From positions 199,603,764 to 199,667,763 of the forward strand of contig NC_052147.1 in assembly GCF_902713615.1 (NCBI RefSeq): a stretch of DNA of 64,000 bases. The letters run 5' to 3'. Shown in pieces: positions 12,631 through 52,400 of this stretch (position 1 is its first letter; every line of letters starts with the position of its first letter). The notes beneath the pieces are model-generated. The model was not told the DNA's origin. It searched no databases and saw only the letters and a list, made by a program, of their open reading frames with translations. A program made the translations under genes and the position numbers. Origin of the DNA: Scyliorhinus canicula (lineage: Eukaryota).

Positions 12631-12756
12631 CAAATATTTGCTAGGGATGGCGATGCAGCAGGGGGGTGGGGAAAGAGATAGGGGGTTGGGGGTGGTGGTG
12701 GGGGTGGTGGGGGGGGGGGGGGGGGGTCGAAAGAGAAACCAAAAAGTGCATCTTAC

Positions 12757-14513: not shown

Positions 14514-14596
14514 CATCGACCATAGACTCCCCTAGAAACGAATCTGTGACCGAAACATCACACAAATTCGGTTCTACAGGGTATATATAGACGACG
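14514..14596 (-). ncRNA. MIR10B: microRNA mir-10b precursor (mature 5p at 14561-14583)
   Basis: Minus strand TACCCTGTAGAACCGAATTTGTG is miR-10b-5p. The 3p arm ACAGATTCGTTTCTAGGGGAGT (14547-14526) pairs with it. Canonical position 1.4 kb upstream of the HoxD4 ATG. Confidence 0.97.
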
Positions 14597-26304: not shown

Positions 26305-26730
26305 ATGCACGCACATATACACGTATACACATGCAGGCACACAATTTGCACATACACATACACAGACGGACATATACATACGGAGACATAAACACACACA
26401 GGTAGACACATATACATACGGGCAGACATACAAGCACGCGCAGATACACACAAATACAGACACACGTATATATACAGACAAACATACACATAAATGCACA
26501 GACACAGATAGACATAGACAAACATATAAACGCACACGTAAAGATACGCATATATTTATACACACATACATAGATACACATATACACACACATGCACACA
26601 CACACACATACACATAAACCCACACAGATACGGACACAAATATACATCATGACAAACGTACACACATAAACGCACAGGCATACAGACACACAAACACACA
26701 CATGTACATACATACACACACATACACATA
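26305..26730. repeat. Long degenerate (CA)n/(TACA)n microsatellite
   Basis: About 425 bp of acacatacacagacacatata-type repeat; source of three spurious V/C/Y-rich ORFs. Confidence 0.9.
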
Positions 26731-29439
26731 GAGTGGCATTCCTGCGGAGTATTTTAGCACTTTTAGCAAGATTGTGAACTTCGTGACATTTAAGAGCATA
26801 AATTAAATAATTCGTTCTTAAAAATTGTAACTCTCATTGAATTAATAAATAAGCCTTTTCTAATGATTATGTTTATTATTTTTTCGTTGTTCTTTTTCAT
26901 GCGTTTACACTGAATTATGTATTGTCAAGAAAATTGATAAATCACAAATCAGTCTTTCCAAGTATTATAAAAAGATCAGAGTGTAGCTATCGCATACCTC
27001 CAGGTAAACAGCCTGGGTTTATTGAATATTATAGCTAAACAAATATTCATCTCGTTTAATTATGTAACAGAGACGAAAGGAGCTTGATTGATAAAACCTG
27101 CATAAGAATTCTTGTCTGCATCATTAACACACAGGAATTAACATGGACGATGCTTTGAGAATTATATGAAAATATACGATGAACACAATTACTAGCAATT
27201 GTTGCTTGTGAAATGAGGTAAAATGAAACTACTTTCTCAATAGGGCAATGAACACCTCTCCCAATCTTTTTTTAAATTTTTTTTATTACTTTATCTTAGC
27301 TACAAAGCCAGGGCTCAGAGTGTGGACAGAGGCGAACCCCTAATCCAGCTCCTTGCCTGCTCCAAAAACCAATTCAAATTGAATCCAATTCATGGCCCCC
27401 ATAAAGGAGACATACCAGATCTGAGCCAAAAGGCTCAATCTACGCTCGATCTTAGCCCTCTCCCAATCTGATATATCCGAGTATGATACATTTCTGTTTG
27501 TCGACCTGTTCTAAAAATAAATAATTGATATTGACACACTTACAATGTTATAAATAATAGTACGATTTAATTGCAAATGTTACAATATCTTTACACATGT
27601 ATTTGATTCTAGCAACAATTTGCAATATTATTTTAAGCAGTTTCTGTGTCCCTTTGACAAAATACCTGTTGGTCTATGCGGTAGATACAGGCAAGTATAG
27701 ATCAGCAGTTTGAAAATATCTCTTTCATTTGCCAATACATTTCAGATGCTAAAAAATTGAACCAATATTACTATAATTGTACGCCGCATGGATACTCAAA
27801 CCAATCCATTGCATTTTATCTACCAGTTAAAATAATCTAGAGACTGAAGGAATTCAAACATGTGACAGATATGACAATTTCAAATGGATGCAATTGCAAT
27901 CTCCCTCGATTCACTTTAATGTTAAGTGTGAGAAATCATAACCAATCCCTCTGGATATTTAATCACTGGGAATGGATACAAAGAAATGCCTTGGAAAATA
28001 TAACATCTCGCCCGCCCTTTTTCTGCGCATATTTCTACAGCAAGATGTTGCACCTAAATGGAAACGATGGTGGTGGGGGGGGGGGGGGGGGGGGGGGGGG
28101 AGAGAGAGAGAGTTGCGGGAACGGGACCCAGTATTTCTTTCGTGACCGTTACGTGCGAGCAATTATCATGGGTTTGGAATTTTTCCTACCAAATTAAAAC
28201 ACCCCGAAGTCTGCAGAGGTTAGAGTTTTGATATAGGTAACATCCAATTTAGGTACAACTTGTTGCAGTAAATGAGTCATCAGATGGGCGAGCTGCTATT
28301 ATTTGAAACATTTGCATTAAAAATACCGCAGTTAAATATTTATTGAATGGGCTGCTGATTACTAGCACATTAAAACCACAGTCTGTTATCGACTGCAGGG
28401 TAATTATTGCAAGAGTACCACTCATTTGTGCAAAGTTCTGTCACGTGGTTGGTCATCATGAAAATGTTGGCCAAACATTTCTTCTAAATTCTGATCGTTT
28501 CTATGATTACTGCACGGAATTATCCGGATCATTAACACAAGGCGCATCATTCATCTCTGCAATTCATCCTCAGCGTAAAAGAGTCCAACTAACATCCTCG
28601 TCCGAAAGACGCGGAAAAGCACACACTGACAAAAGGAGAAACAAGGCGCCAATCACCAATAACGATCAGATTTCACTCCCGCAAAATAACAGGAACAATT
28701 GTATTGCTATTGGCAGGAACAATAATCATTATCCCATGAGTAAACGACACACCCTGATTAATCTCCGCTCTGGATCATATGAGAAAATATCAGCTGCTTT
28801 GTAGAGAAGCTTTCATACCAAAAATTGACAAGAATCGCAACTCTTCGTCCCTATTGCGGAAAAGAAATATTTAATTCATCTGCGCCACTAGTCCCCATTT
28901 GAATTGAAATGACCACCCGTACACGGTTTGAATCTGTCTTGTTTGTTCATTTATGTCGAATGCTTCTCGACCTCCCAAACAGTTGCCTGCAACTCGACCA
29001 ACGAAACAAACGCCCTTCCCTCCTCTGTCCAGCGCTGTTATCTGCGACAGCAGAGAATAGAAAAACACAGCACTTACCCGCTTCCGGGCGGTTCCCCAGA
29101 ATAGTAACCAGCTGGATGTAGTATTCCATTTCGACTTTTTCGACAATAAAGGAACTTAAAAAAAGGTAAAGCGAAACTGAAGGGCAAACGGAACACTGTA
29201 AACAGACGTCAGCGGTCTGTGAGAGTGATCAGGTTGCTAAATCCCAGCATGGGTCGAATGACTTCCTCATAGTTGCACAGAAAAGGACTGAATAGCGCGA
29301 ATACAGCGGAAAGTCTCCTTTTTTGCAAGCAGCTGGCGTCAAATACCAACGACAAAAGCAGGCAAGGGCAGATACTGACAGAAAAGACGATTTGAGACGA
29401 GTTAGCAGCGGAATGCAGTGAAATATTCACAAGGGAAAT

Positions 29440-29570: not shown

Positions 29571-32500
29571 TCCTTGCGGATTTCACAAGTACAGCTCACA
29601 AGCGCCATGTTTCCTTTAACGAGTTCTTTGCTGCAGCTATTTGTTACCCTGTGTATTGTAACGAACGCCTTAACTAACTATATAAGCGGAAATGCCGCGC
29701 CAACATAGAGGGAGACATCTCCCACAGCAATGGGCATTCCGCAGTCTAGCAATTAAATCGCTACAATTTGTTTGTACATCCATAGTTATGTTAGTTCGTG
29801 GTTCGAATAAGTTAATGAGTGTCAGTTGTATTTTTTTTGGGGTGCGGGAAAGCAAGTTCAACAAATAATTAAACGTGTAATGATCACAGTTCCTAATGCC
29901 GCCAGTTATGTAACTGAAAGCTGCTCTTTTTGGGATTTTTGCCTTGATTTTCACTGGCCATTCGATATGGCCGAGGCCAAGAGTAGGAAATAAGCGAAGC
30001 AGAAGGGTGTTCGTCTGTTAAATAAATATCAAAACTGCGGCGGCCGCCTTCCTTCAAATAGTAATCAATAATAAAAGCAATGTATTAATTTATTCTTAAT
30101 GTTGCACGGTGCATTCTGCACAGGTGAGAGGTTGAAGATGAAGTATCGGTGCATATGTAGCTACCTAATTATACCTTGTATTTCCATTCCAATCACATGG
30201 AGTGTGATACCCTTCCTGTCTCCATTATGGGCAGAAAATGGTTCTATATCAAATGTAAAAACACATCCAAGTGGTCAATAAGGCTTGCCTAAGCCGGATA
30301 AAATAGATTCTGGGTTAACACATTGGGGAGAATGAAAATGAATCAGTTCGTTCAGTATTTTCTCCCTTCAATGGCGGGGAGCGGACTCTGCGATGAAATA
30401 CTCCACCGTGTACAATTCACGTCAACTCCATTCATGGGGACGGGGACGGGGGGGGGGGGGGGGAGATGGCTCGTCGATATTTGATAACCATAATTTTACC
30501 CCCTATCCGCATATATCCCGGGGGTTTAACTCGGGAGAAAGGCCATCACTTGGTTGCTCTATTGCTTTGAGCTAATCTTACTGGGGGGGGGGGGGGGGGG
30601 GGGTGTAGAAATCATGACCGCTTAACCTGATCCGTGTCGGTATCTGATTTTCAATTTATGGTAAGGAAAACACTACCAGAAATGTCGCGTCAAAATTGCA
30701 AGGATTCTGACCAGAACGGCCAAGCCAGCAAGTTACCCTCAGTGTGGATGTGCAAAGTCTGGGTGTGCGCTGGGTGGTATAGGAGGAGGCTGAGTGCTGC
30801 AGGAGTGTCTGCAGAGGTTTATACACGGGATTGAACCGAAAAGAGCCTTTTACAATGATTGAGAAGGGAGGATTTTTTAATGTATATAATGTTGGAATTT
30901 TTTCATCTCCATTGTTTGTTTAAAAAAAAATCAATGGAGGCAACGCTCACATGTACGTGCGAATTCCAAACAAAGCTTCGTCATTCTGTGCACCGTCTTT
31001 CGGGAGATTTCAACGGGAGATTCCTACTATCTCAGACAATTATTAATCTGGCCCTGCCCTGGTGCATCACTTGGTGGTCGCTATTCCGGTGAAGACCCGA
31101 TTTGATCGCCCAACTTTTAAATGGGAGCAGATGCAAAATGGACTTAAAAAAAATGTTTCGGGCCATAGGACGTTTTAATAACAGATTTATTGAAACTTGA
31201 TATCAGTACGTTTTCTAAAAGCGGTCAGTGCAAATATATTGAGGGGGGGGGGGGGGTATCTGGCTAGAGAGCAAGAGAGACTTGTGAAAACATGTTAATT
31301 TTGGACAGAGCACTCCCCTCCGATGCCTAAATGCAATTTCAAAAATAAACACTATTATTTCTTTATTTCGAGTTGATTTATTCTGCAAAATTACTTATCC
31401 GTTTTGACCGGGTACTGATTGTGGCATTGAATATACTTCCAAAATATATTTGCATTCAAATACAACATGATGCCATTGAGTTCAGGATGCATCAAATTGA
31501 CAATATGAAAATGTTTGAACAAAATTGGAATTTCCCAATTGTTGTCCGTCTTGAATGAGATAATATTTCACACGCTCACACTACCTGATAGAATGAGGAT
31601 GTTTTGGAAGTTTGACTTTTTGTTATGTAACATTTAATTCCATTCGATTACAAATCCGAACTGTACGGTGAAGCGGAAATTATTATAGTTATGGAATCTG
31701 GAGACCGCTGGTCAAATGTATAATGCCATCTTTAGTTTTACAGATAAACGCGGCATTTTAATTGTTTGTTTAACATTTGAAATACAATGTTTGCTTTTTC
31801 TCCCCCTGTTGATTGTTTCCTGTTTGCTCTTATCAATATTTTCCGTGATTCAGGCTGATCGTGTGCGCAAAGAAAAAGAGAGATTGGAAATTGCCGATTC
31901 CTGCGGTTGACGTTTATATGCAACATGCACGCACTGATCCTCTTCAAATTTCTACTTGGCTCGACCGCGGATGAAGGAAAATGTCATGAAAAGTTGGACG
32001 GTTAAGCAACAGCTGAATATTCTCCTTTCGCTCCCAGCCTTTAAACCAGGGAGGAATAAAATGGAGGCCAGAAATCCGCAGTTTGTCCAGTGATTTGTAG
32101 TATTAGAACTTTTATTGTCGGTTTTACGAGATTTGCTGATATACGTGTACAGTAGACCGCAGTTTAACACCAAACACTAACTTTTACAACGGAGGTTTAG
32201 CCACACATGAGCCAGGCATGTGATCTGATTAACCAATGGTAATTCGAAAGACTTTTAACTTGAGGCATAGATAAACTAATATTCTAATCATCAGCTATAT
32301 CATTAACTTTTATAACTACATATAAAGAATTACGCCATCTTCAGGCTTTCGCATCCCTGTAACAGGGCGGCGATGCTGTATTGCAGGCATGCACCTTGTG
32401 GCCACAGAAATAGACAAACACAAATAAAGTACATCTGATTTCACCGTAAAGAACACAATCTCGAAACCGCCAGACACTAGCTGGCGAGCTAGTGATCCAG

Positions 32501-36438: not shown

Positions 36439-37094
36439 AAAACTGACCCATTAGGTTGGGAAGCTTAAATATACATCTGGCTGTTAATTTCACTGTATTT
36501 ATTAGCTCTGTTTGACTTTTCTTTGTGTGTTCTAACCGAAGGGTAGAGGCGCCAGAATTTGGAGAGAATAAGTTAACACTTGTCGGGTTTATTGAATAAT
36601 TCCTCAATGATCAGCGGCCACTACGTGTATCTGATATTTGTTGTAAGAAGTCAGTGGACGTGCAGGGTATCTGACTAATATAGAGCAATGAAGTATCATT
36701 TTTTAAAATAAAAAGAACGGCGGCCAGGGAATTTTTTTTGCCGAAATTTTGGGAACGTTATTTTTCAAATAGCGCCTCCATCCTCACTCTGTAGATACAA
36801 TTTAAAATTTAACTTCAATTATCATTCATCTTCCTCTCTGGAATATTTATAAAATTGTAGCTAATTGATTCCGGGTGGCGGGTATGCAACGAGCTGACAG
36901 AAGTCAAATCAATGTGCAGTTCAGTTTATTTTGCTTCACAATCTGTAACTGATCTCAAACGCTTGAAAGATATTTCAGGACCTAGTACATGTCCTGTAAG
37001 ATTAGCCGCTAGCGGCTATTGTATTACTTTTTAAAAACTGGCCCATAAGGTTGGGAAGCTTAAATATGCATCTGGCTGTTAATATCACTGTATT
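36439..37094 (+). repeat. Dispersed direct repeat: 61-bp copies at 36439-36499 and 37034-37094
   Basis: 57/61 identical by manual alignment; offset 595 bp. Confidence 0.9.
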
Positions 37095-45889: not shown

Positions 45890-46072
45890 AAACAGAGAAC
45901 ATGCTGGAACTGCTCAGCAGGTCAGGCAGCATCGGCGGAGAGAGAAACAGGTCGATCGACCTGACGGTTCAACTGTTTCTCTCTCCACAGAGGCTGCCTT
46001 GCATATTGAGCATTTTACAGCATTTTCCCTTTCTATTTCAGATCTCCCAGCGCCCGCACCATTTTGTTTTTC
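45890..46072. mobile_element. V-SINE/MER6-like palindromic repeat relic
   Basis: Left arm atgctggaactgctcagcaggtcaggcagcatcggcggagagagaaacag has a diverged inverted copy at ~45973-46035, followed by a tttcagat.tcca tail. Resembles the abundant chondrichthyan V-domain repeat (family assignment from memory). Confidence 0.75.
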
Positions 46073-47140: not shown

Positions 47141-47412
47141 TCATGAGAAGGTGAGGTTAGTGGTCAGTTCTCGGATTCGGGTTTCTCTATTCATTTTCTT
47201 CAGCTTCATCCTACGATTTTGAAACCAAATCTTGACTTGTCTGTCGGTCAGATTCACGCTCTTACTTATCTCTAGACGGCGCTCACGAGTCAGATACATA
47301 TTAAATAAAAATTCTTTCTCTAATTCCAGTGTTTGATATTTTGTATAAGGACATCTCTTCTTCCGTCCACTTTTTGCTGTTAGCCAGTTGCTTATCGGAG
47401 TTTTGAGCTTTT
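47141..47412 (-). CDS. HOXD10: Homeobox protein Hox-D10, exon 2 (homeodomain); full protein 336 aa
   Basis: Manual translation: [90 protein letters not shown]. The NLTFS C-terminus fits D10. Confidence 0.97.
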
Positions 47413-48369
47413 CTATCAGAAGTAAGAAACGAGAGATAAGATTTTAGCAAACACGTCCCCATAACAACCAAACTTCAAATCAGTCTCAGTGCGGTTATGC
47501 GCACAATTGGCATTTTAAGTTACACACAGTAACCTAATACATGCTCTTTATATTTTGCCAATTGTCAAGCAAATATACACATAAATTGGTGCAATTCAAA
47601 GCGAAAATCGCCGAATAGAGCAAGGAAGCTAAAACTATGATTTTAGAGATTGACAAATAGGATGATACAATATGCTATTTACTGCAATGCACATTTTGGG
47701 ATAGGTTTCTCAGTGAATTATAAAATATATGCCAAGCGATTTAAGGTGCACTGAAAACAAACAATTTGTTAACATTGGATGATTAGTGGGCAATGCTATT
47801 ACGTGTGAACAGAATTTAAAGCTGTGGGTTGCAATGCACCAACAGGATTTTCACCAATAGGTCATTTTTTTCAATTTCATAGCTTAAATTTACAGATTGT
47901 GAAATCCTGACAATACAAACGTATGTGGCCATGATAATAATTCCGGAGCTAAATCTTAGGCTATTAAACATACTACCGCTGCCTCTTACAGAGCAGGTTA
48001 ATTGGAATTTATGTGCTATGTGTGCTAGTAATATTTCATATTCTACCAATGGAACTTTTATCACTGCGTATAGTGAGCAATATGTTATATATCTAACAAA
48101 CTATTTAAGGGAAAGCGACGATTCTATCTACGACCAATACTTCCACACTCACTATTTCCAAGTCAGCAAATTATGCAAATAACCAATTTCCCTTCAAAAG
48201 ACCGAGTACAACTAGCTCGTGTTGTAGTGCTAAATATATTAATAATTACTTTGAATATGCTGCATGCCGTGCGTTGCACTAACCGATTCATATAGTATCT
48301 TAGGGTTCTCATTATCTAAAACATACAAACACCAAGGTGAAACTATCCATGTTATACATGTTATACTAT

Positions 48370-48422
48370 CCGTTTATCAGAATTATACATGCAGCAAGTG
48401 CTTTCCTCCTTTACGCTAGCAG
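48370..48422 (+). repeat. Exact 53-bp copy of HoxD10 exon-1 coding sequence (49056-49108) inside the HoxD10 intron
   Basis: ccgtttatcagaattatacatgcagcaagtgctttcctcctttacgctagcag occurs at both positions. Confidence 0.95.
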
Positions 48423-48676
48423 AAAAAATGGTTTGCCGGCCTTTACTACGTCATTAACAATTTCATGGAATTGTTGAGCACATTTTGTAAAATCTAATTG
48501 TCACAAAAGAAAACTGTCTTTTTATTCAAGGTTAATGCCGAGGTTGCATTTTCTTTGTACATTTAGTGAACAGAAATACACATAACCTGCCAAACATATG
48601 ACTGTGATAAAGTTACGCCGTGTTATGTAAGCTTTATGATGTTGCAATGTTCACATTAAATCTTTGAAATGCTCAC

Positions 48677-49415
48677 CTTTAGTCTCATTGTCCGATAGTT
48701 CCGAGCTAGATTCGGCTTCCTCAGCGGTTGCGCTGACCTCCACTAACCTCGGCTTTGGCTCAGGAGTTTCCACATATATACCCTTAGTGGGTTCCTGTGC
48801 GTCTGGCTTCTCGTTTATTTTCCTTTCCATTGTAGGCTGGCTGGATACCTGGAGTTTACTGATAAGCCCTAGATTTGACTGCGGCATTACATTTGCACTG
48901 ATTTCCCCAGCGTGATTATAGTCCAGGCTTTTCTCCAATGGATAAGCCTGACAGAGTCTGAAATATCCCGGGATGGGAATCTCAGGACTTTCAATGGAAC
49001 AGTTTTCTGTGATCAACCTGGGATAGGCGGGAATTGCGGTAGGAGTGAGTTTTGCCCGTTTATCAGAATTATACATGCAGCAAGTGCTTTCCTCCTTTAC
49101 GCTAGCAGGAAATGTGCACGTGGGCATCTGTGGAGTAACAGGTTGTTCAATTCGGCATGGTCTTGAAGGGTCAGCCCAGCCATCCACCTGAGATAAATAC
49201 GGATGAACGCTGATGCTCATATTTTGATGGCTAACCTCTCCTCGTTTAGTCATGGTCGGGAGCAGTCCACAGGTCTGCATTCCGTAAGTTCCCATATCCG
49301 TGCTCGATGGCATGTACATGGAGCTGGTTGAATAGAACCCGTCACCCCTGCAAGCACTAATCAGGGAATCGACTAAAAACGAGTTAGTAGCGGGAGAGCT
49401 GCTGGAACAGGACAT
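48677..49415 (-). CDS. HOXD10: Homeobox protein Hox-D10, exon 1
   Basis: MSCSSSSPATNSFLVDSLISACRGD...YGMQTCGLLP...VKEESTCCMY...IPGYFRLCQAY. Donor AAAG|GTGAG at 48676. Confidence 0.97.
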
Positions 49416-52400
49416 TTTGGAGAGTAATTTGAAGAAGGCAGATGATGTCCTTTGTAAGCCGACATCTCTAACAAAACATTCCCTGTGTAATTGTGGATGC
49501 CTCTGTACAACCACATGACTATTGAGCCAATGGAATTTGAAAATGGCCTTGAAGCACTACCTCCTGGCACATCACATGATCCACATTCGGTTGAATTTGA
49601 GCTTAACTGTGGACAACAGCGACACCTACAAATGCAATTCCAAAGTGGCGGTCGCTCCAGCGCATCGTAATCCCCACACAGACCCCGGTTCAAACCTTTC
49701 ATCATATTCATACTGCAGATCGTATAATCTCATCCCAGCCACCAGTCGTAAAATAATTCGCATTCTGTTTGTAAAACACAACCAGCATTTTTCTGATAGG
49801 ACAAAAAAATAGACTCGAAGAGGAATAAAAATCGCTGCAATTCCTGACCATGGGGGAGTAAAAGCGGAGTTATTGGTAGAAAATGTCGTCGAAATGAGAT
49901 GAGTGCGGAGCAGGTTTATGATCTGAATGTCTTGATAATTTCAGGGACCCCGGAGCAGCCAGGGGCATTTCATTGTATACATTCTACACAACTTGCCTAT
50001 TATCCGCATAACCAGCCGCATCATCCACTTTGTTTTGATATAAACCAAACATTTGATGAAATCTATGAATGGATTCAAAATGTTGCAGACTTATCAGCAT
50101 TCATTTGATACATGTCTTGCTGGGCGGAACTACGCTCTATTTAGCTGTGTAGAAGTATTTAATGCATAATAAAACCAATCTTCACGAGTAAAATTGATGA
50201 TTACGAGCCGCCATAACAGTGTTCACATTTGAATTATTGTAATCTTCCTCCCGCTCTGTCTTTACCATTACAATGGTTGGCGTGCAGACATACTGGTGTT
50301 AATATCACACGCTTCTATAACTTAACTGTATTCGAACATTTGCACAGACACCCTCCAAGATGTAAGACCCTGGATGAAGAAAAGAAGCAACTTGCGTTTC
50401 TTGCCATTACTTCCCCCCCCCCCCCCCCCCCCACAATTTAATAATCATTATTAGAGTTCAGAGTTTATTGCCCTATCCTAAAATTTCCACCTTAGCTTTG
50501 GAACTCTAACACATCTCACTGCAGATGGGTGGCTTCTCTGTTGACCATCAATAGAATCACTCTAGAAAAATAGGCCGGAAATGTATCCGCTCTCGTTGGC
50601 CGAAAAACAAGGGAAAGACACACAGCGGGTCTGTCTGCTTTCCAAGGCGACTGGCCGTGCTGACTGTTTTCGGGATTCAGCTGGGTTGATGGAGTTGCAA
50701 TCTCGTGTTGCCTCCGCGCACAGTCGATTTTTCGAACATCCCTAAATGGAGAAAATGTGCCAGTGAACAAGTCATGAACATGTCCGGTCATAGGGAGAAC
50801 CCTCGATGGTTCATGAAAATTCACTTTGTGAGCAGCACCGGCTATGGAGGAGCAATGTGACATTCACACAAAGCCAGCGAAAATTTACACTTAACAAGAA
50901 GAGCCGCGAAGGGGACAGTGTCAGGGTCAAGGCTGTCTTCATTTCTCTGTTTATTTTGCAATGTAAATGTAATCTTCAGAGTGTTTTCGGATTATGTGAA
51001 TATTAGTCTTGCACTAAATGTCTAAATTCCTACAAATGTTGAAAAGTAACAGGCATTAGATATAAGCACTAAATACTTGCGGGTGGTGGAAGTTATATTT
51101 ACAACTATTTTCGCAGATCGTTTGCGGCTGTTTATTCACGCATCATTATTTCGGATTTGCTAGAATTTGTAGTCCAAATCTTTACAATCAATGTTATGGG
51201 GGCCCTGCATTTTAAGATTTGCGTTTGATTTCTGCTGACACCGATTCAAATCCAGAACATAATTTCGTTCACAACACCTCGATACTGAGTAGCTTATCTC
51301 CGCCATTCCGAGGGAAACATACTTATCTGAAAGGTAGAGCATTTATATTTCTCCAAAATATATCGCAATCCTCTCCTTAACAGCCAACCCGGTATCAAGG
51401 CTTACAAAGGGCACTAGAATTGGGCCTTAAATGTTATTAAACTATGCTCTTTCCGTCTAAAACTATTTTGCCATGTTTTAAAAACGACCTTAAAGACGAG
51501 CGCTATGACATGGCAAGCAATGTGACCAACTGAGAACATCATACATTATTGATAAAGTTCAGATTAATTTATTCAGCGTCTTGTTTTAATTGAAAATGGG
51601 AGTAGGCATGCTTTGATGTAAAGTTAGTTAACCGGGCAAAGGAGAAAAGATTACTGTTCTTGGGCGTTTGAAATCCTGGCCACATTTATGTGTAACATGA
51701 GTGAATATGTGCAAAATACAGAAACAAGATTGATGCTACCTTCTATTCTTGACTCCTTTATTATTTCCTCCGTCAAATACCTCCATTAGCCGAGAAGCTT
51801 AATGCCCATTCAGCCTAAACCATGACTCCGTTTATATTCTAGTAAAATAAAACACAATACGCCAGTGCTGTTTTACTACTGATACGAGATACTATTCAAT
51901 AAACACGTGTAGATAGCAGGGCTATATCTGGAATAATATGATGCTTCAAGAACTTTTCGATGTAATAGACTGACCTCAATGATTTGTTTACAATAAGCAG
52001 TGAATCGTTGAATGAGAGTCAACAATGCGCTCCAGTCCACAGCGCTTCCCCATATTATAAACAATATTCATATTCACGGCAAGGTCACCCCCACAGTGAT
52101 TTTTCCTGTAAGCGATCAAAGCCAAATAAGCTGGCGGCAGTGTTTTTGCAAGTAGGCAGGCAAGAACCAGCGCTGCTCTATTTCCAGAACACAGATAGTT
52201 GCAGCCTTGAACGAGAGAATCCTCCGCGATTTTGAGGCCTGCACAGTACAAAACTGGTATTTATGTACAAATTGCGAGCTCAAAGTTAAACAGCCCTCAA
52301 AAGGTGAACGGCCTCGATGTTGGAATAGGCAATGCCGAGCTCAAACGTGTTTTAGTCAAGAAGAATTTGTTTTTCACTCAACGCAAGGCAATCCGTTGCT

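What the first reader, a model, noticed from the sequence alone, without database searches (positions are those of the whole stretch)
48370..49108. HoxD10 intron carries a perfect 53-bp copy of its own coding exon, overlapping a candidate poison acceptor
Seen: 48370-48422 is identical to 49056-49108 (codons for PASVKEESTCCMYNSDKR, a conserved Hox10 motif), 686 bp away and in the same orientation. In the intron the sense strand reads ccattttttctgctAG|CGTAAAGG. Splicing the phase-1 exon-1 donor to this AG (48417-48416) gives G+CG TAA (Ala-stop), i.e. a homeodomain-less HoxD10 or an NMD substrate. Perfect identity means a very recent templated insertion, ongoing gene conversion, selection on a duplicated exonic cis-element, or a local assembly error. 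I know of no description of this arrangement.
Basis: partly seen in the sequence, partly recalled or inferred. Interest (0 to 1): 0.75.

Follow-up and report, generated by a model that had tools for sequence, protein, structure and literature searches.

The report
Young templated insertion in HoxD10 intron
A 52-base piece of the catshark HoxD10 coding exon was copied into the gene's own intron, most likely by error-prone DNA repair; it is real and apparently species-specific, but nothing shows that it changes splicing.

Summary
48370-48422 is identical to 49056-49108 (53 nt; 57 nt with one mismatch), against 11.9 nt on average (16 at most) in simulated 5-kb stretches. The gene is Scyliorhinus canicula HoxD10, on the minus strand.

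It is not an assembly error. Contigs built from the reads of two separate studies carry the intron flank joined to the copy.

It is a derived insertion. Chiloscyllium, Heptranchias and Callorhinchus all show a clean 52-nt gap at that spot. The S. torazame intron is 65 nt shorter.

The copy carries GTA (Val), a state found in S. canicula but not in S. torazame (Ile). It was therefore probably made after those two species split.

Source and target share short matches at both junctions: CATTT on the left, and ACGG against ancestral ACAG on the right. There is no target-site duplication. This is the signature of a microhomology-mediated templated insertion, a known class of mutation.

The insertion splits the most conserved block of the intron, which is shared by sharks and a chimaera.

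The "poison acceptor" arithmetic is correct (G+CG TAA). However, the AG ranks only 8th of 60 intronic AGs on a crude score, has two AGs just upstream, and has no RNA support. The one read-laying run gave no junctions.

Earlier notes of this scan report other local templated copies in this genome (s1-207464, s1-203790, s1-228687). They are unchecked.

The parts
48677..49415 (-). HoxD10 exon 1 (ATG at 49415; last base 48677; phase 1)
   Evidence: Translation is 100% identical to S. canicula HoxD10. The donor AAG|GTGAGC is read.
49056..49108 (-). Source of the copy: codons for PASVKEESTCCMYNSDKR in exon 1
   Evidence: This stretch is conserved in all HoxD10 proteins aligned and in the DNA of three outgroups, so the copy went from exon to intron.
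47413..48676 (-). The single HoxD10 intron, 1264 nt
   Evidence: Intron lengths in relatives, from gene spans minus the coding length: S. torazame 1199, Chiloscyllium 1198, Heptranchias 1200, Heterodontus 1205, Cetorhinus 1223.
48370..48422 (-). Intronic copy, identical to the exon over 53 nt, starting 255 nt downstream of the donor
   Evidence: Contigs from reads support it: X3 48263-48422 and 48393-49075; X7 48235-48422.
48374..48425 (-). Net 52-nt gain relative to Chiloscyllium, Heptranchias and Callorhinchus, as MAFFT places the gap
   Evidence: a clean 52-column gap in all three outgroups between CCATTT and ACAG/ACGG.
48426..48430 (-). Left-junction microhomology CATTT. It stands at the target site and also directly before the source in the exon (49110-49114). 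Two to three T of unclear origin lie between it and the copy.
   Evidence: The exon CATTT (codons ACA TTT) is specific to S. canicula; the outgroups read TCC TTT or TTC.
48370..48373 (-). Right junction: ACGG in S. canicula, where all three outgroups have ACAG. The G matches the exon template, so this is an imperfect microhomology of 3 in 4.
48416..48417 (-). Candidate cryptic acceptor AG inside the copy (ccattttttctgctAG|CGTAAAGG)
   Evidence: Arithmetic confirmed. Crude PWM rank is 8 of 60 intronic AGs; AGs at 48447 and 48442 lie just upstream. No junction was seen, but RNA was effectively not sampled.
48343..48369 (-). Flank just 3' of the insertion that also differs from the outgroups: 6 substitutions plus 6 extra nt, with a tandem 9-mer GTATAACAT x2 (48366-48349)
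   Evidence: Whether this belongs to the same event is inference.
48310..48500 (-). Intronic block conserved between sharks and Callorhinchus and split by the insertion
   Evidence: identity across the three outgroups is 0.70-0.75 (Heptranchias = Callorhinchus 0.85-0.93) just 5' of the site, and 0.55-0.60 just 3' of it, against about 0.3 in most of the 5' half of the intron. The block was not found in gar or python.
47141..47412 (-). HoxD10 exon 2 (homeodomain and stop)

Best explanation
This is a real, evolutionarily young insertion in the Scyliorhinus canicula lineage. About 50 nt of HoxD10 exon 1 were copied, in the same orientation, into the gene's intron 686 nt downstream. The most likely mechanism is microhomology-primed DNA synthesis at a break or a stalled fork. 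That means polymerase-theta-type end joining with a templated insert, or a replicative template switch of the MMBIR/FoSTeS type.

Inferred steps: a break arose between CATTT and ACAG in the intron. A 3' end paired with ACGG at the end of the exon segment. About 50 nt were copied. The new end then re-paired with the CATTT / T-run on the other side of the break and was sealed, leaving 2-3 T of uncertain origin.

Shown: the copy is real, it went from exon to intron, it is absent in outgroups, the junctions share microhomology, and it carries a canicula-specific state. Inferred: the repair pathway, and neutrality. The copy most likely has no function. Its AG is an ordinary cryptic site.
For: Reality: X3 (study P2, 2024) has a contig at 48263-48422, which is unique flank plus the whole copy. 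It has another at 48393-49075, which runs from the last 30 nt of the copy through the unique intron and donor into exon 1. X7 (study P3, 2019) has a contig at 48235-48422. The contig breaks at 48393, 48422 and 49079 are where a k=31 graph branches at a 53-nt exact repeat. No contig lacks the copy, and the depths of the junction contigs equal those of the flanks.

Derived state: there is a clean 52-nt gap in Chiloscyllium, Heptranchias and Callorhinchus, inside well-aligned flanks.

Age: the copy carries GTA (Val106). S. torazame, Cetorhinus, Chiloscyllium, Heptranchias and the rays have Ile there. The S. torazame gene span is 2210 nt against 2275 nt. Only 4 nt of that difference lie in 47373-47840. 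The intron is 1198-1205 nt in four of the five other sharks and 1223 nt in Cetorhinus.

Mechanism: CATTT precedes both source and target, and ACGG/ACAG ends both. There is no target-site duplication and no transposon feature. Germline templated inserts with microhomology are an established class (PMC4490562, PMC8421209, PMC7165422).

No function: the AG ranks 8 of 60 and the AG-free zone is violated. There is no RNA structure signal, z = +0.86. There is no Rfam match in the intron.
Against: The left junction is not clean: 2-3 extra T and a C/T mismatch need slippage, untemplated addition or a later mutation.

A 50-nt insert copied from 686 nt away is larger and more distant than typical polymerase-theta inserts, as I recall them. 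This is why a replicative template switch cannot be separated from end joining.

S. torazame DNA at the site itself was not seen. The file was too large, and the relative's contigs covered only 47373-47840. Absence there rests on intron length and on the Val/Ile state.

Neutrality is not shown. The insertion sits inside the most conserved intronic block, and no RNA data were obtained.

One of the two DNA studies may be the source of the assembly.
Confidence: 0.75

Rival explanations
1. The insertion created a working alternative (poison) acceptor. Splicing 48677>48415 would give a homeodomain-less HoxD10 (246 aa + Ala) or, with a downstream donor, an NMD-targeted transcript that tunes HoxD10 dosage in S. 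canicula.
For: The arithmetic is right. A run of six T precedes CTGCTAG. A YNYURAY-like TGTTAAT lies about 38 nt upstream. A purine-rich AAAGGAGGAAAG (exonic-enhancer-like) follows the AG, read directly. Possible downstream donors exist at 48152 (ATA|GTGAGT) and 48283.
Against: On a crude PWM the AG ranks 8 of 60 (0.67 against 3.77 for the true acceptor). Two AGs (48447, 48442) lie between the best branch-point candidate and the AG, whereas the true acceptor has none in 50 nt. The downstream donors are weak (2.0 or less against 7.6). The site is lineage-specific, so there is no conservation to suggest use. No junction was seen, although RNA was not really sampled.
Confidence: 0.07
2. The insertion matters through what it breaks, not what it carries. 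It splits an intronic regulatory element conserved across cartilaginous fishes and changes HoxD10 or neighbouring Hox regulation in S. canicula.
For: The target block is the best conserved part of the intron (Heptranchias = Callorhinchus 0.85-0.93). The 30 nt after the site are 28/30 identical between Heptranchias and Callorhinchus, but in S. canicula carry 6 substitutions plus 6 extra nt, including loss of the CAGATG motif.
Against: No function is known for the block. It is not found in gar or python. Chiloscyllium also has 4 changes in those 30 nt, so constraint is not absolute. Many conserved elements tolerate insertions, and no expression data were used here.
Confidence: 0.12
3. Assembly artefact: the intronic copy does not exist in the animal.
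For: Perfect identity over a short span is what some polishing or collapse errors look like.
Against: Contigs built from the reads of two studies and two samples contain the unique intron flank joined to the copy on one side. In X3 they do so on both sides.
Confidence: 0.02
4. An older duplication kept identical by gene conversion between exon and intron copies.
For: Zero differences over 53 nt.
Against: The copy is absent in all three outgroups, and the intron is shorter in S. torazame. From general knowledge, 53 nt is well below the tract length at which vertebrate conversion is efficient. At the 3.8% intron divergence seen between the two Scyliorhinus (18 mismatches in 468 nt), only about one difference is expected even at the maximum age, so identity needs no special force.
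Confidence: 0.03
5. Same event, but templated by RNA: the nascent HoxD10 pre-mRNA served as the template for break repair in the intron.
For: Source and target lie in one transcription unit in the same orientation. Polymerase theta can reverse-transcribe (general knowledge, not checked here).
Against: Nothing distinguishes it from a DNA template. The copied piece does not cross a splice junction, so it carries no RNA-specific mark. HoxD10 would have to be transcribed in the germ line.
Confidence: 0.04

Closest known systems
[quoted passage not shown]
   Same: The insert is identical to nearby sequence. Short homologies lie at the junctions. It is heritable and accumulates in natural lineages (PMC4490562; PMC7165422).
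   Different: At about 50 nt copied from 686 nt away, it is larger and more distant than the inserts I recall for TMEJ (general knowledge). No accompanying deletion is evident. Polymerase dependence cannot be tested.
MMBIR / FoSTeS templated insertions (MMB-TI)
   Same: A template switch at microhomology or imperfect microhomology copies a nearby stretch and returns. Such events are found as germline variants and can be complex (PMC8421209). The remodelled flank with a 9-nt tandem repeat would fit a multi-step event.
   Different: In the yeast system of that paper, templates lay within 100 bp of the insertion. Here only one clear template is seen, and the second patch (shared CATGTATAA) is uncertain.
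Poison exons and cryptic 3' splice sites; homeodomain-less Hox isoforms
   Same: An in-intron AG, once used, gives an immediate stop before the homeodomain. Truncated Hox isoforms made by alternative splicing are described for other Hox genes (general knowledge, not checked here).
   Different: There is no evidence of use, no conservation, a weak score and a violated AG-free zone.
Short-range segmental or tandem duplication, or transposon insertion
   Same: Two direct copies lie within 1 kb.
   Different: Only 53 nt were copied and the 633 nt between the copies were not. There is no target-site duplication, terminal repeat or poly-A.

Membership tests
Microhomology-mediated templated insertion (TMEJ / MMBIR class) | Inserted sequence is identical to a nearby template | tested here: met
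   53/53 identity to exon 1, 686 nt away, in the same orientation.
Microhomology-mediated templated insertion (TMEJ / MMBIR class) | It is a derived insertion: the empty site exists in relatives | tested here: met
   A clean 52-nt gap in Chiloscyllium, Heptranchias and Callorhinchus. The S. torazame intron is 65 nt shorter.
Microhomology-mediated templated insertion (TMEJ / MMBIR class) | Microhomology between the target site and the template ends at both junctions | tested here: met
   Left: CATTT in both, offset by 2-3 T. Right: ACGG in the template against ancestral ACAG at the target. The left match is about 1e-3 by chance. The right match is weak on its own.
Microhomology-mediated templated insertion (TMEJ / MMBIR class) | No transposon hallmarks (target-site duplication, terminal repeats, poly-A) | tested here: met
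   The flanks read show none.
Microhomology-mediated templated insertion (TMEJ / MMBIR class) | Dependence on polymerase theta or on break-induced replication | not testable with these tools
   This needs genetics. The pathway is inferred from the scar only.
Poison exon / functional alternative acceptor | Junction reads in RNA | tested here: inconclusive
   No joints. However, all four runs were contigs, and the presumed RNA run (X14) covered only 47512-47682.
Poison exon / functional alternative acceptor | Competitive splice signals (pyrimidine tract, branch point, AG-free zone, downstream donor) | tested here: not met
   Rank 8 of 60 on a crude PWM recalled from memory. AGs at 48447 and 48442 lie upstream. 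The best downstream donor scores 2.0 against 7.6 for the true one. This is not a MaxEnt-grade test.
Poison exon / functional alternative acceptor | Premature stop after the junction | tested here: met
   G+CG TAA.
Poison exon / functional alternative acceptor | Conservation across species | tested here: not met
   The copy is absent from three outgroups.
Assembly artefact | Junctions absent from raw data | tested here: not met
   The junctions are present in contigs of runs from studies P2 and P3.

The most novel reading that the evidence does not exclude
A single repair accident gave S. canicula both a split of an intronic element conserved across cartilaginous fishes and a new AG followed by a purine-rich exon-derived enhancer. 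This could yield a species-specific homeodomain-less or NMD-regulated HoxD10 isoform and a changed HoxD10 output. It would be a dated, one-step origin of a Hox regulatory novelty in a model shark.
Probability: 0.06. Interest if true: 0.6.

Novelty: new member of a known kind. Interest (0 to 1): 0.3.

Why it matters
It is a clean, datable example of a germline templated insertion in a vertebrate. Template, target, junction homologies, outgroup empty sites and a lineage-specific marker are all visible in one gene.

It interrupts an intronic block conserved between sharks and a chimaera. It is therefore a natural test of how much such elements tolerate.

It also matters in practice:
- Reads of 53 nt or less from this part of HoxD10 map to two places.
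- k=31 assemblies break HoxD10 exon 1 here, as seen.
- Probes, primers or CRISPR guides placed in this stretch have a second target 686 nt away.

It does not, on present evidence, reveal a new regulatory mechanism.

Tried and rejected
RNA evidence. The single read-laying run returned no joints. All four runs were contigs. The presumed RNA run X14 gave one intronic contig (47512-47682) and nothing on exon 1, probably because conserved contigs are filtered. The splice question is therefore open, not answered.

S. torazame DNA. Its HoxD10 locus was found, but no DNA was served because the file was too large. The same happened for Cetorhinus, Heterodontus, Hemitrygon and the newer Chiloscyllium assembly. 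The coded relative X15 covered only 47373-47840.

The S. canicula protein P0001 is not on record as a called gene.

Deeper conservation of the target block. blastn against the gar and python HoxD10 loci gave only chance-level hits.

RNA element in the intron. Rfam found nothing there, and folding gave z = +0.86.

A local excess of copy-paste events. Only one other short-range duplicate was found in the window.

Substitution clusters. I considered whether the S. canicula-specific substitutions next to the source (ACA TTT for TCC TTT, and GTA for ATA) mark the same event. Two of the four protein differences from S. torazame lie within 6 residues, which has roughly a 0.2 probability by chance, so this is not evidence. 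The 9-mer CATGTATAA is shared between the insert and the remodelled flank and may be a second templated patch, but part of it is ancestral, so I left it as a note.

Full report
**Observation**

The two stretches 48370-48422 and 49056-49108 are identical over 53 nt. They lie in the same orientation, 686 nt apart, and the match extends to 57 nt with one mismatch. No third copy exists in the window, even allowing 15 mismatches. In 100 Markov simulations of the surrounding 5 kb, the longest exact repeat averaged 11.9 nt and never exceeded 16 nt. Chance is therefore excluded.

The gene lies on the minus strand:
- Exon 1 is 49415-48677 (739 nt, phase 1, donor AAG|GTGAGC).
- The single intron is 48676-47413 (1264 nt).
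- Exon 2 is 47412-47141 and holds the homeodomain.

The exon-1 translation is 100% identical to HoxD10 of Scyliorhinus canicula. Homeoboxes of the neighbouring Hox genes lie on the same strand on both sides.

**Is it an assembly error? No.**

Runs of the same species from several studies hold this stretch. I laid contigs of two of them, from different samples and years, on 47372-49450.
- Run X3 has a contig at 48263-48422, which is 107 nt of unique intron plus the whole copy.
- X3 has another at 48393-49075. It runs from the last 30 nt of the copy through unique intron and the donor into exon 1.
- X3 has a third starting at 49079.
- Run X7 has a contig at 48235-48422.

The breaks at 48393, 48422 and 49079 are where a 31-mer graph must branch at an exact 53-nt repeat. 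Every 31-mer of such contigs comes from reads, so both junctions of the intronic copy exist in raw data. No contig skipping the copy was reported. The junction contigs are as deep as their neighbours. One of the two studies may be the source of the assembly, so I count at least one independent confirmation.

**Direction and age**

I fetched the HoxD10 loci of Chiloscyllium punctatum (L001), Heptranchias perlo (L002) and Callorhinchus milii (L003) and aligned them with the window. The intron is alignable, at 70%, 75% and 56% identity. At the copy all three show one clean 52-column gap:
- S. canicula reads ...AAACCATTT[TTTCTGCTAGCG...CTGATAA]ACGGATAG...
- The outgroups read ...AAA(C/T)CATT(T/G)ACAGATGTCA...

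The exon segment is present and conserved in all three. The copy therefore went from exon to intron, within the catshark lineage.

The protein alignment narrows the age. S. canicula has Val106 (GTA). S. torazame, Cetorhinus, Chiloscyllium, Heptranchias and the rays have Ile (ATA in the outgroup DNA). The intronic copy carries GTA. It was therefore copied after that substitution, and so probably after the split of the two Scyliorhinus species.

Lengths agree with this. The ATG-to-stop span is 2275 nt here and 2210 nt in S. torazame, with proteins of equal length. Only 4 nt of the difference lie in 47373-47840, the part of the relative's intron that I could see. The intron is 1199 nt in S. torazame, 1198 in Chiloscyllium, 1200 in Heptranchias and 1205 in Heterodontus. 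It is 1264 nt here.

I could not read the S. torazame site itself, so absence there is a strong inference, not an observation. Perfect identity adds little. At the 3.8% intron divergence between the two species, only about one difference would be expected even at the maximum age.

**Mechanism**

The source in the exon is preceded by CATTT and ends in ACGG. The target site is CATTT|ACAG. So there is a 5-nt match at the left junction and a 3-of-4 match at the right junction. The G of ACGG agrees with the template rather than with the ancestral intron. There is no target-site duplication, terminal repeat or poly-A.

This is the scar of a microhomology-mediated templated insertion. Such inserts are documented as heritable products of polymerase-theta end joining that accumulate in natural lineages (PMC4490562; PMC7165422). 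They are also documented as MMBIR-type template switches present as germline variants (PMC8421209).

My reconstruction is inferred, not shown. After a break between CATTT and ACAG and resection, the 3' end of the downstream side paired with ACGG on the exposed upstream strand, 686 nt away. It was extended by about 50 nt, released, and then re-paired at the T-run of the other end.

The left junction is untidy. It has six T followed by C, where CATTT+CC would be expected. This needs slippage, untemplated T or a later C>T change. The size and distance of the copy are on the high side for end joining as I know it, so a replicative template switch is equally possible. An RNA template cannot be excluded or supported.

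**What it landed in**

The insertion lies in the middle of the most conserved block of the intron, roughly 48500-48310. Just 5' of the site the three outgroups are 70-75% identical in every column, and Heptranchias matches Callorhinchus at 85-93%. Just 3' of the site the three-way figure is 55-60%. In most of the 5' half of the intron it is about 30%.

The 30 nt after the site are 28/30 identical between Heptranchias and Callorhinchus. In S. canicula they carry 6 substitutions and 6 extra nt, including a tandem GTATAACAT x2 and loss of a CAGATG motif. Chiloscyllium has 4 changes there, so the constraint is not absolute. I cannot tell whether the catshark changes belong to the same event. The block was not detectable in gar or python. 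Its function is unknown.

**The poison-acceptor idea**

The AG is preceded by a good T-run and followed by a purine-rich stretch, and it would give an immediate stop. Several points count against it:
- I used a crude position matrix with frequencies recalled from memory, not MaxEntScan.
- On that matrix the true acceptor ranks first of the 60 intronic AGs (3.77), while this AG ranks 8th (0.67).
- Two AGs, at 48447 and 48442, lie between the best branch-point candidate and the site. The true acceptor has no AG in 50 nt.
- Downstream donors are weak, at 2.0 or less against 7.6.

The site is lineage-specific. There is no RNA evidence either way, because the one read-laying run gave no joints and the presumed RNA run had no contig on exon 1. 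I put functional use at well under 10%.

**Comparison and novelty**

This is a new instance of a known class of mutation, not a new kind of element. A full-text search for S. canicula together with Hoxd10 gave 13 papers. None of the 10 listed deals with this arrangement, judged by title and abstract.

Three unchecked first-stage notes of this scan report other locally templated copies in the same genome. One of them lies upstream of HoxD13, about 13 kb beyond this window. In this window I found only one other short-range duplicate, which is older: 36439-36499 against 37034-37094, at 93% identity.

**Verdict**

The origin is a young templated insertion with junction microhomology, very probably specific to S. 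canicula. It splits a conserved intronic block. Function through splicing is unsupported. Interest is modest: a neat case study and a practical caveat for mapping, assembly and reagent design in catshark HoxD10.

Noticed in passing
window 36439-36499 and 37034-37094: A second short-range direct duplicate (61 nt, 93% identical, 595 nt apart) lies between the Hox8-like and Hox9-like genes. It is older than the HoxD10 copy, and similarity seems to continue a few nt upstream.
   Followed up: partly
window 14519-14590, minus strand: A mir-10 precursor (Rfam RF00104, 69.5 bits) lies in its expected place in the cluster.
   Followed up: no
window 47930-48030, minus strand: A second block of the HoxD10 intron is conserved from sharks to Callorhinchus (three-outgroup identity 0.68-0.72). 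It is probably a regulatory element. Function unknown.
   Followed up: partly
window 49085-49120, minus strand: There is a cluster of S. canicula-specific changes at the 5' edge of the copied exon segment. ACA TTT replaces TCC TTT/TTC (Thr101 for Ser), and GTA replaces ATA (Val106 for Ile). These are two of only four protein differences from S. torazame. This could be chance (about 0.2).
   Followed up: partly
window 48343-48369, minus strand: A tandem 9-mer GTATAACAT x2 and 6 substitutions lie right after the insertion. The 9-mer CATGTATAA is shared with the inserted piece, which may be a second small templated patch.
   Followed up: partly
window 45908-46015: An imperfect hairpin has 43-nt arms, 79% complementary, with a 22-nt loop, downstream of HoxD10.
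   Followed up: no
window 12645-12738, 28065-28113, 30435-30611, 31239-31270; 26349-26750: Long poly-G runs (up to about 27 G) recur in the cluster, and there is a 400-nt CA-rich microsatellite field.
   Followed up: no
window 47602, 47734, 48286, 49338: Runs of the same species differ from the window here. 47602 C>A appears in X3 and X14. One G is put in behind 47734 in X3. 48286 A>T appears in X3 and X7. 49338 C>A appears in X3 and lies in exon 1. They are probably polymorphisms, or at 48286 possibly an assembly base error.
   Followed up: no
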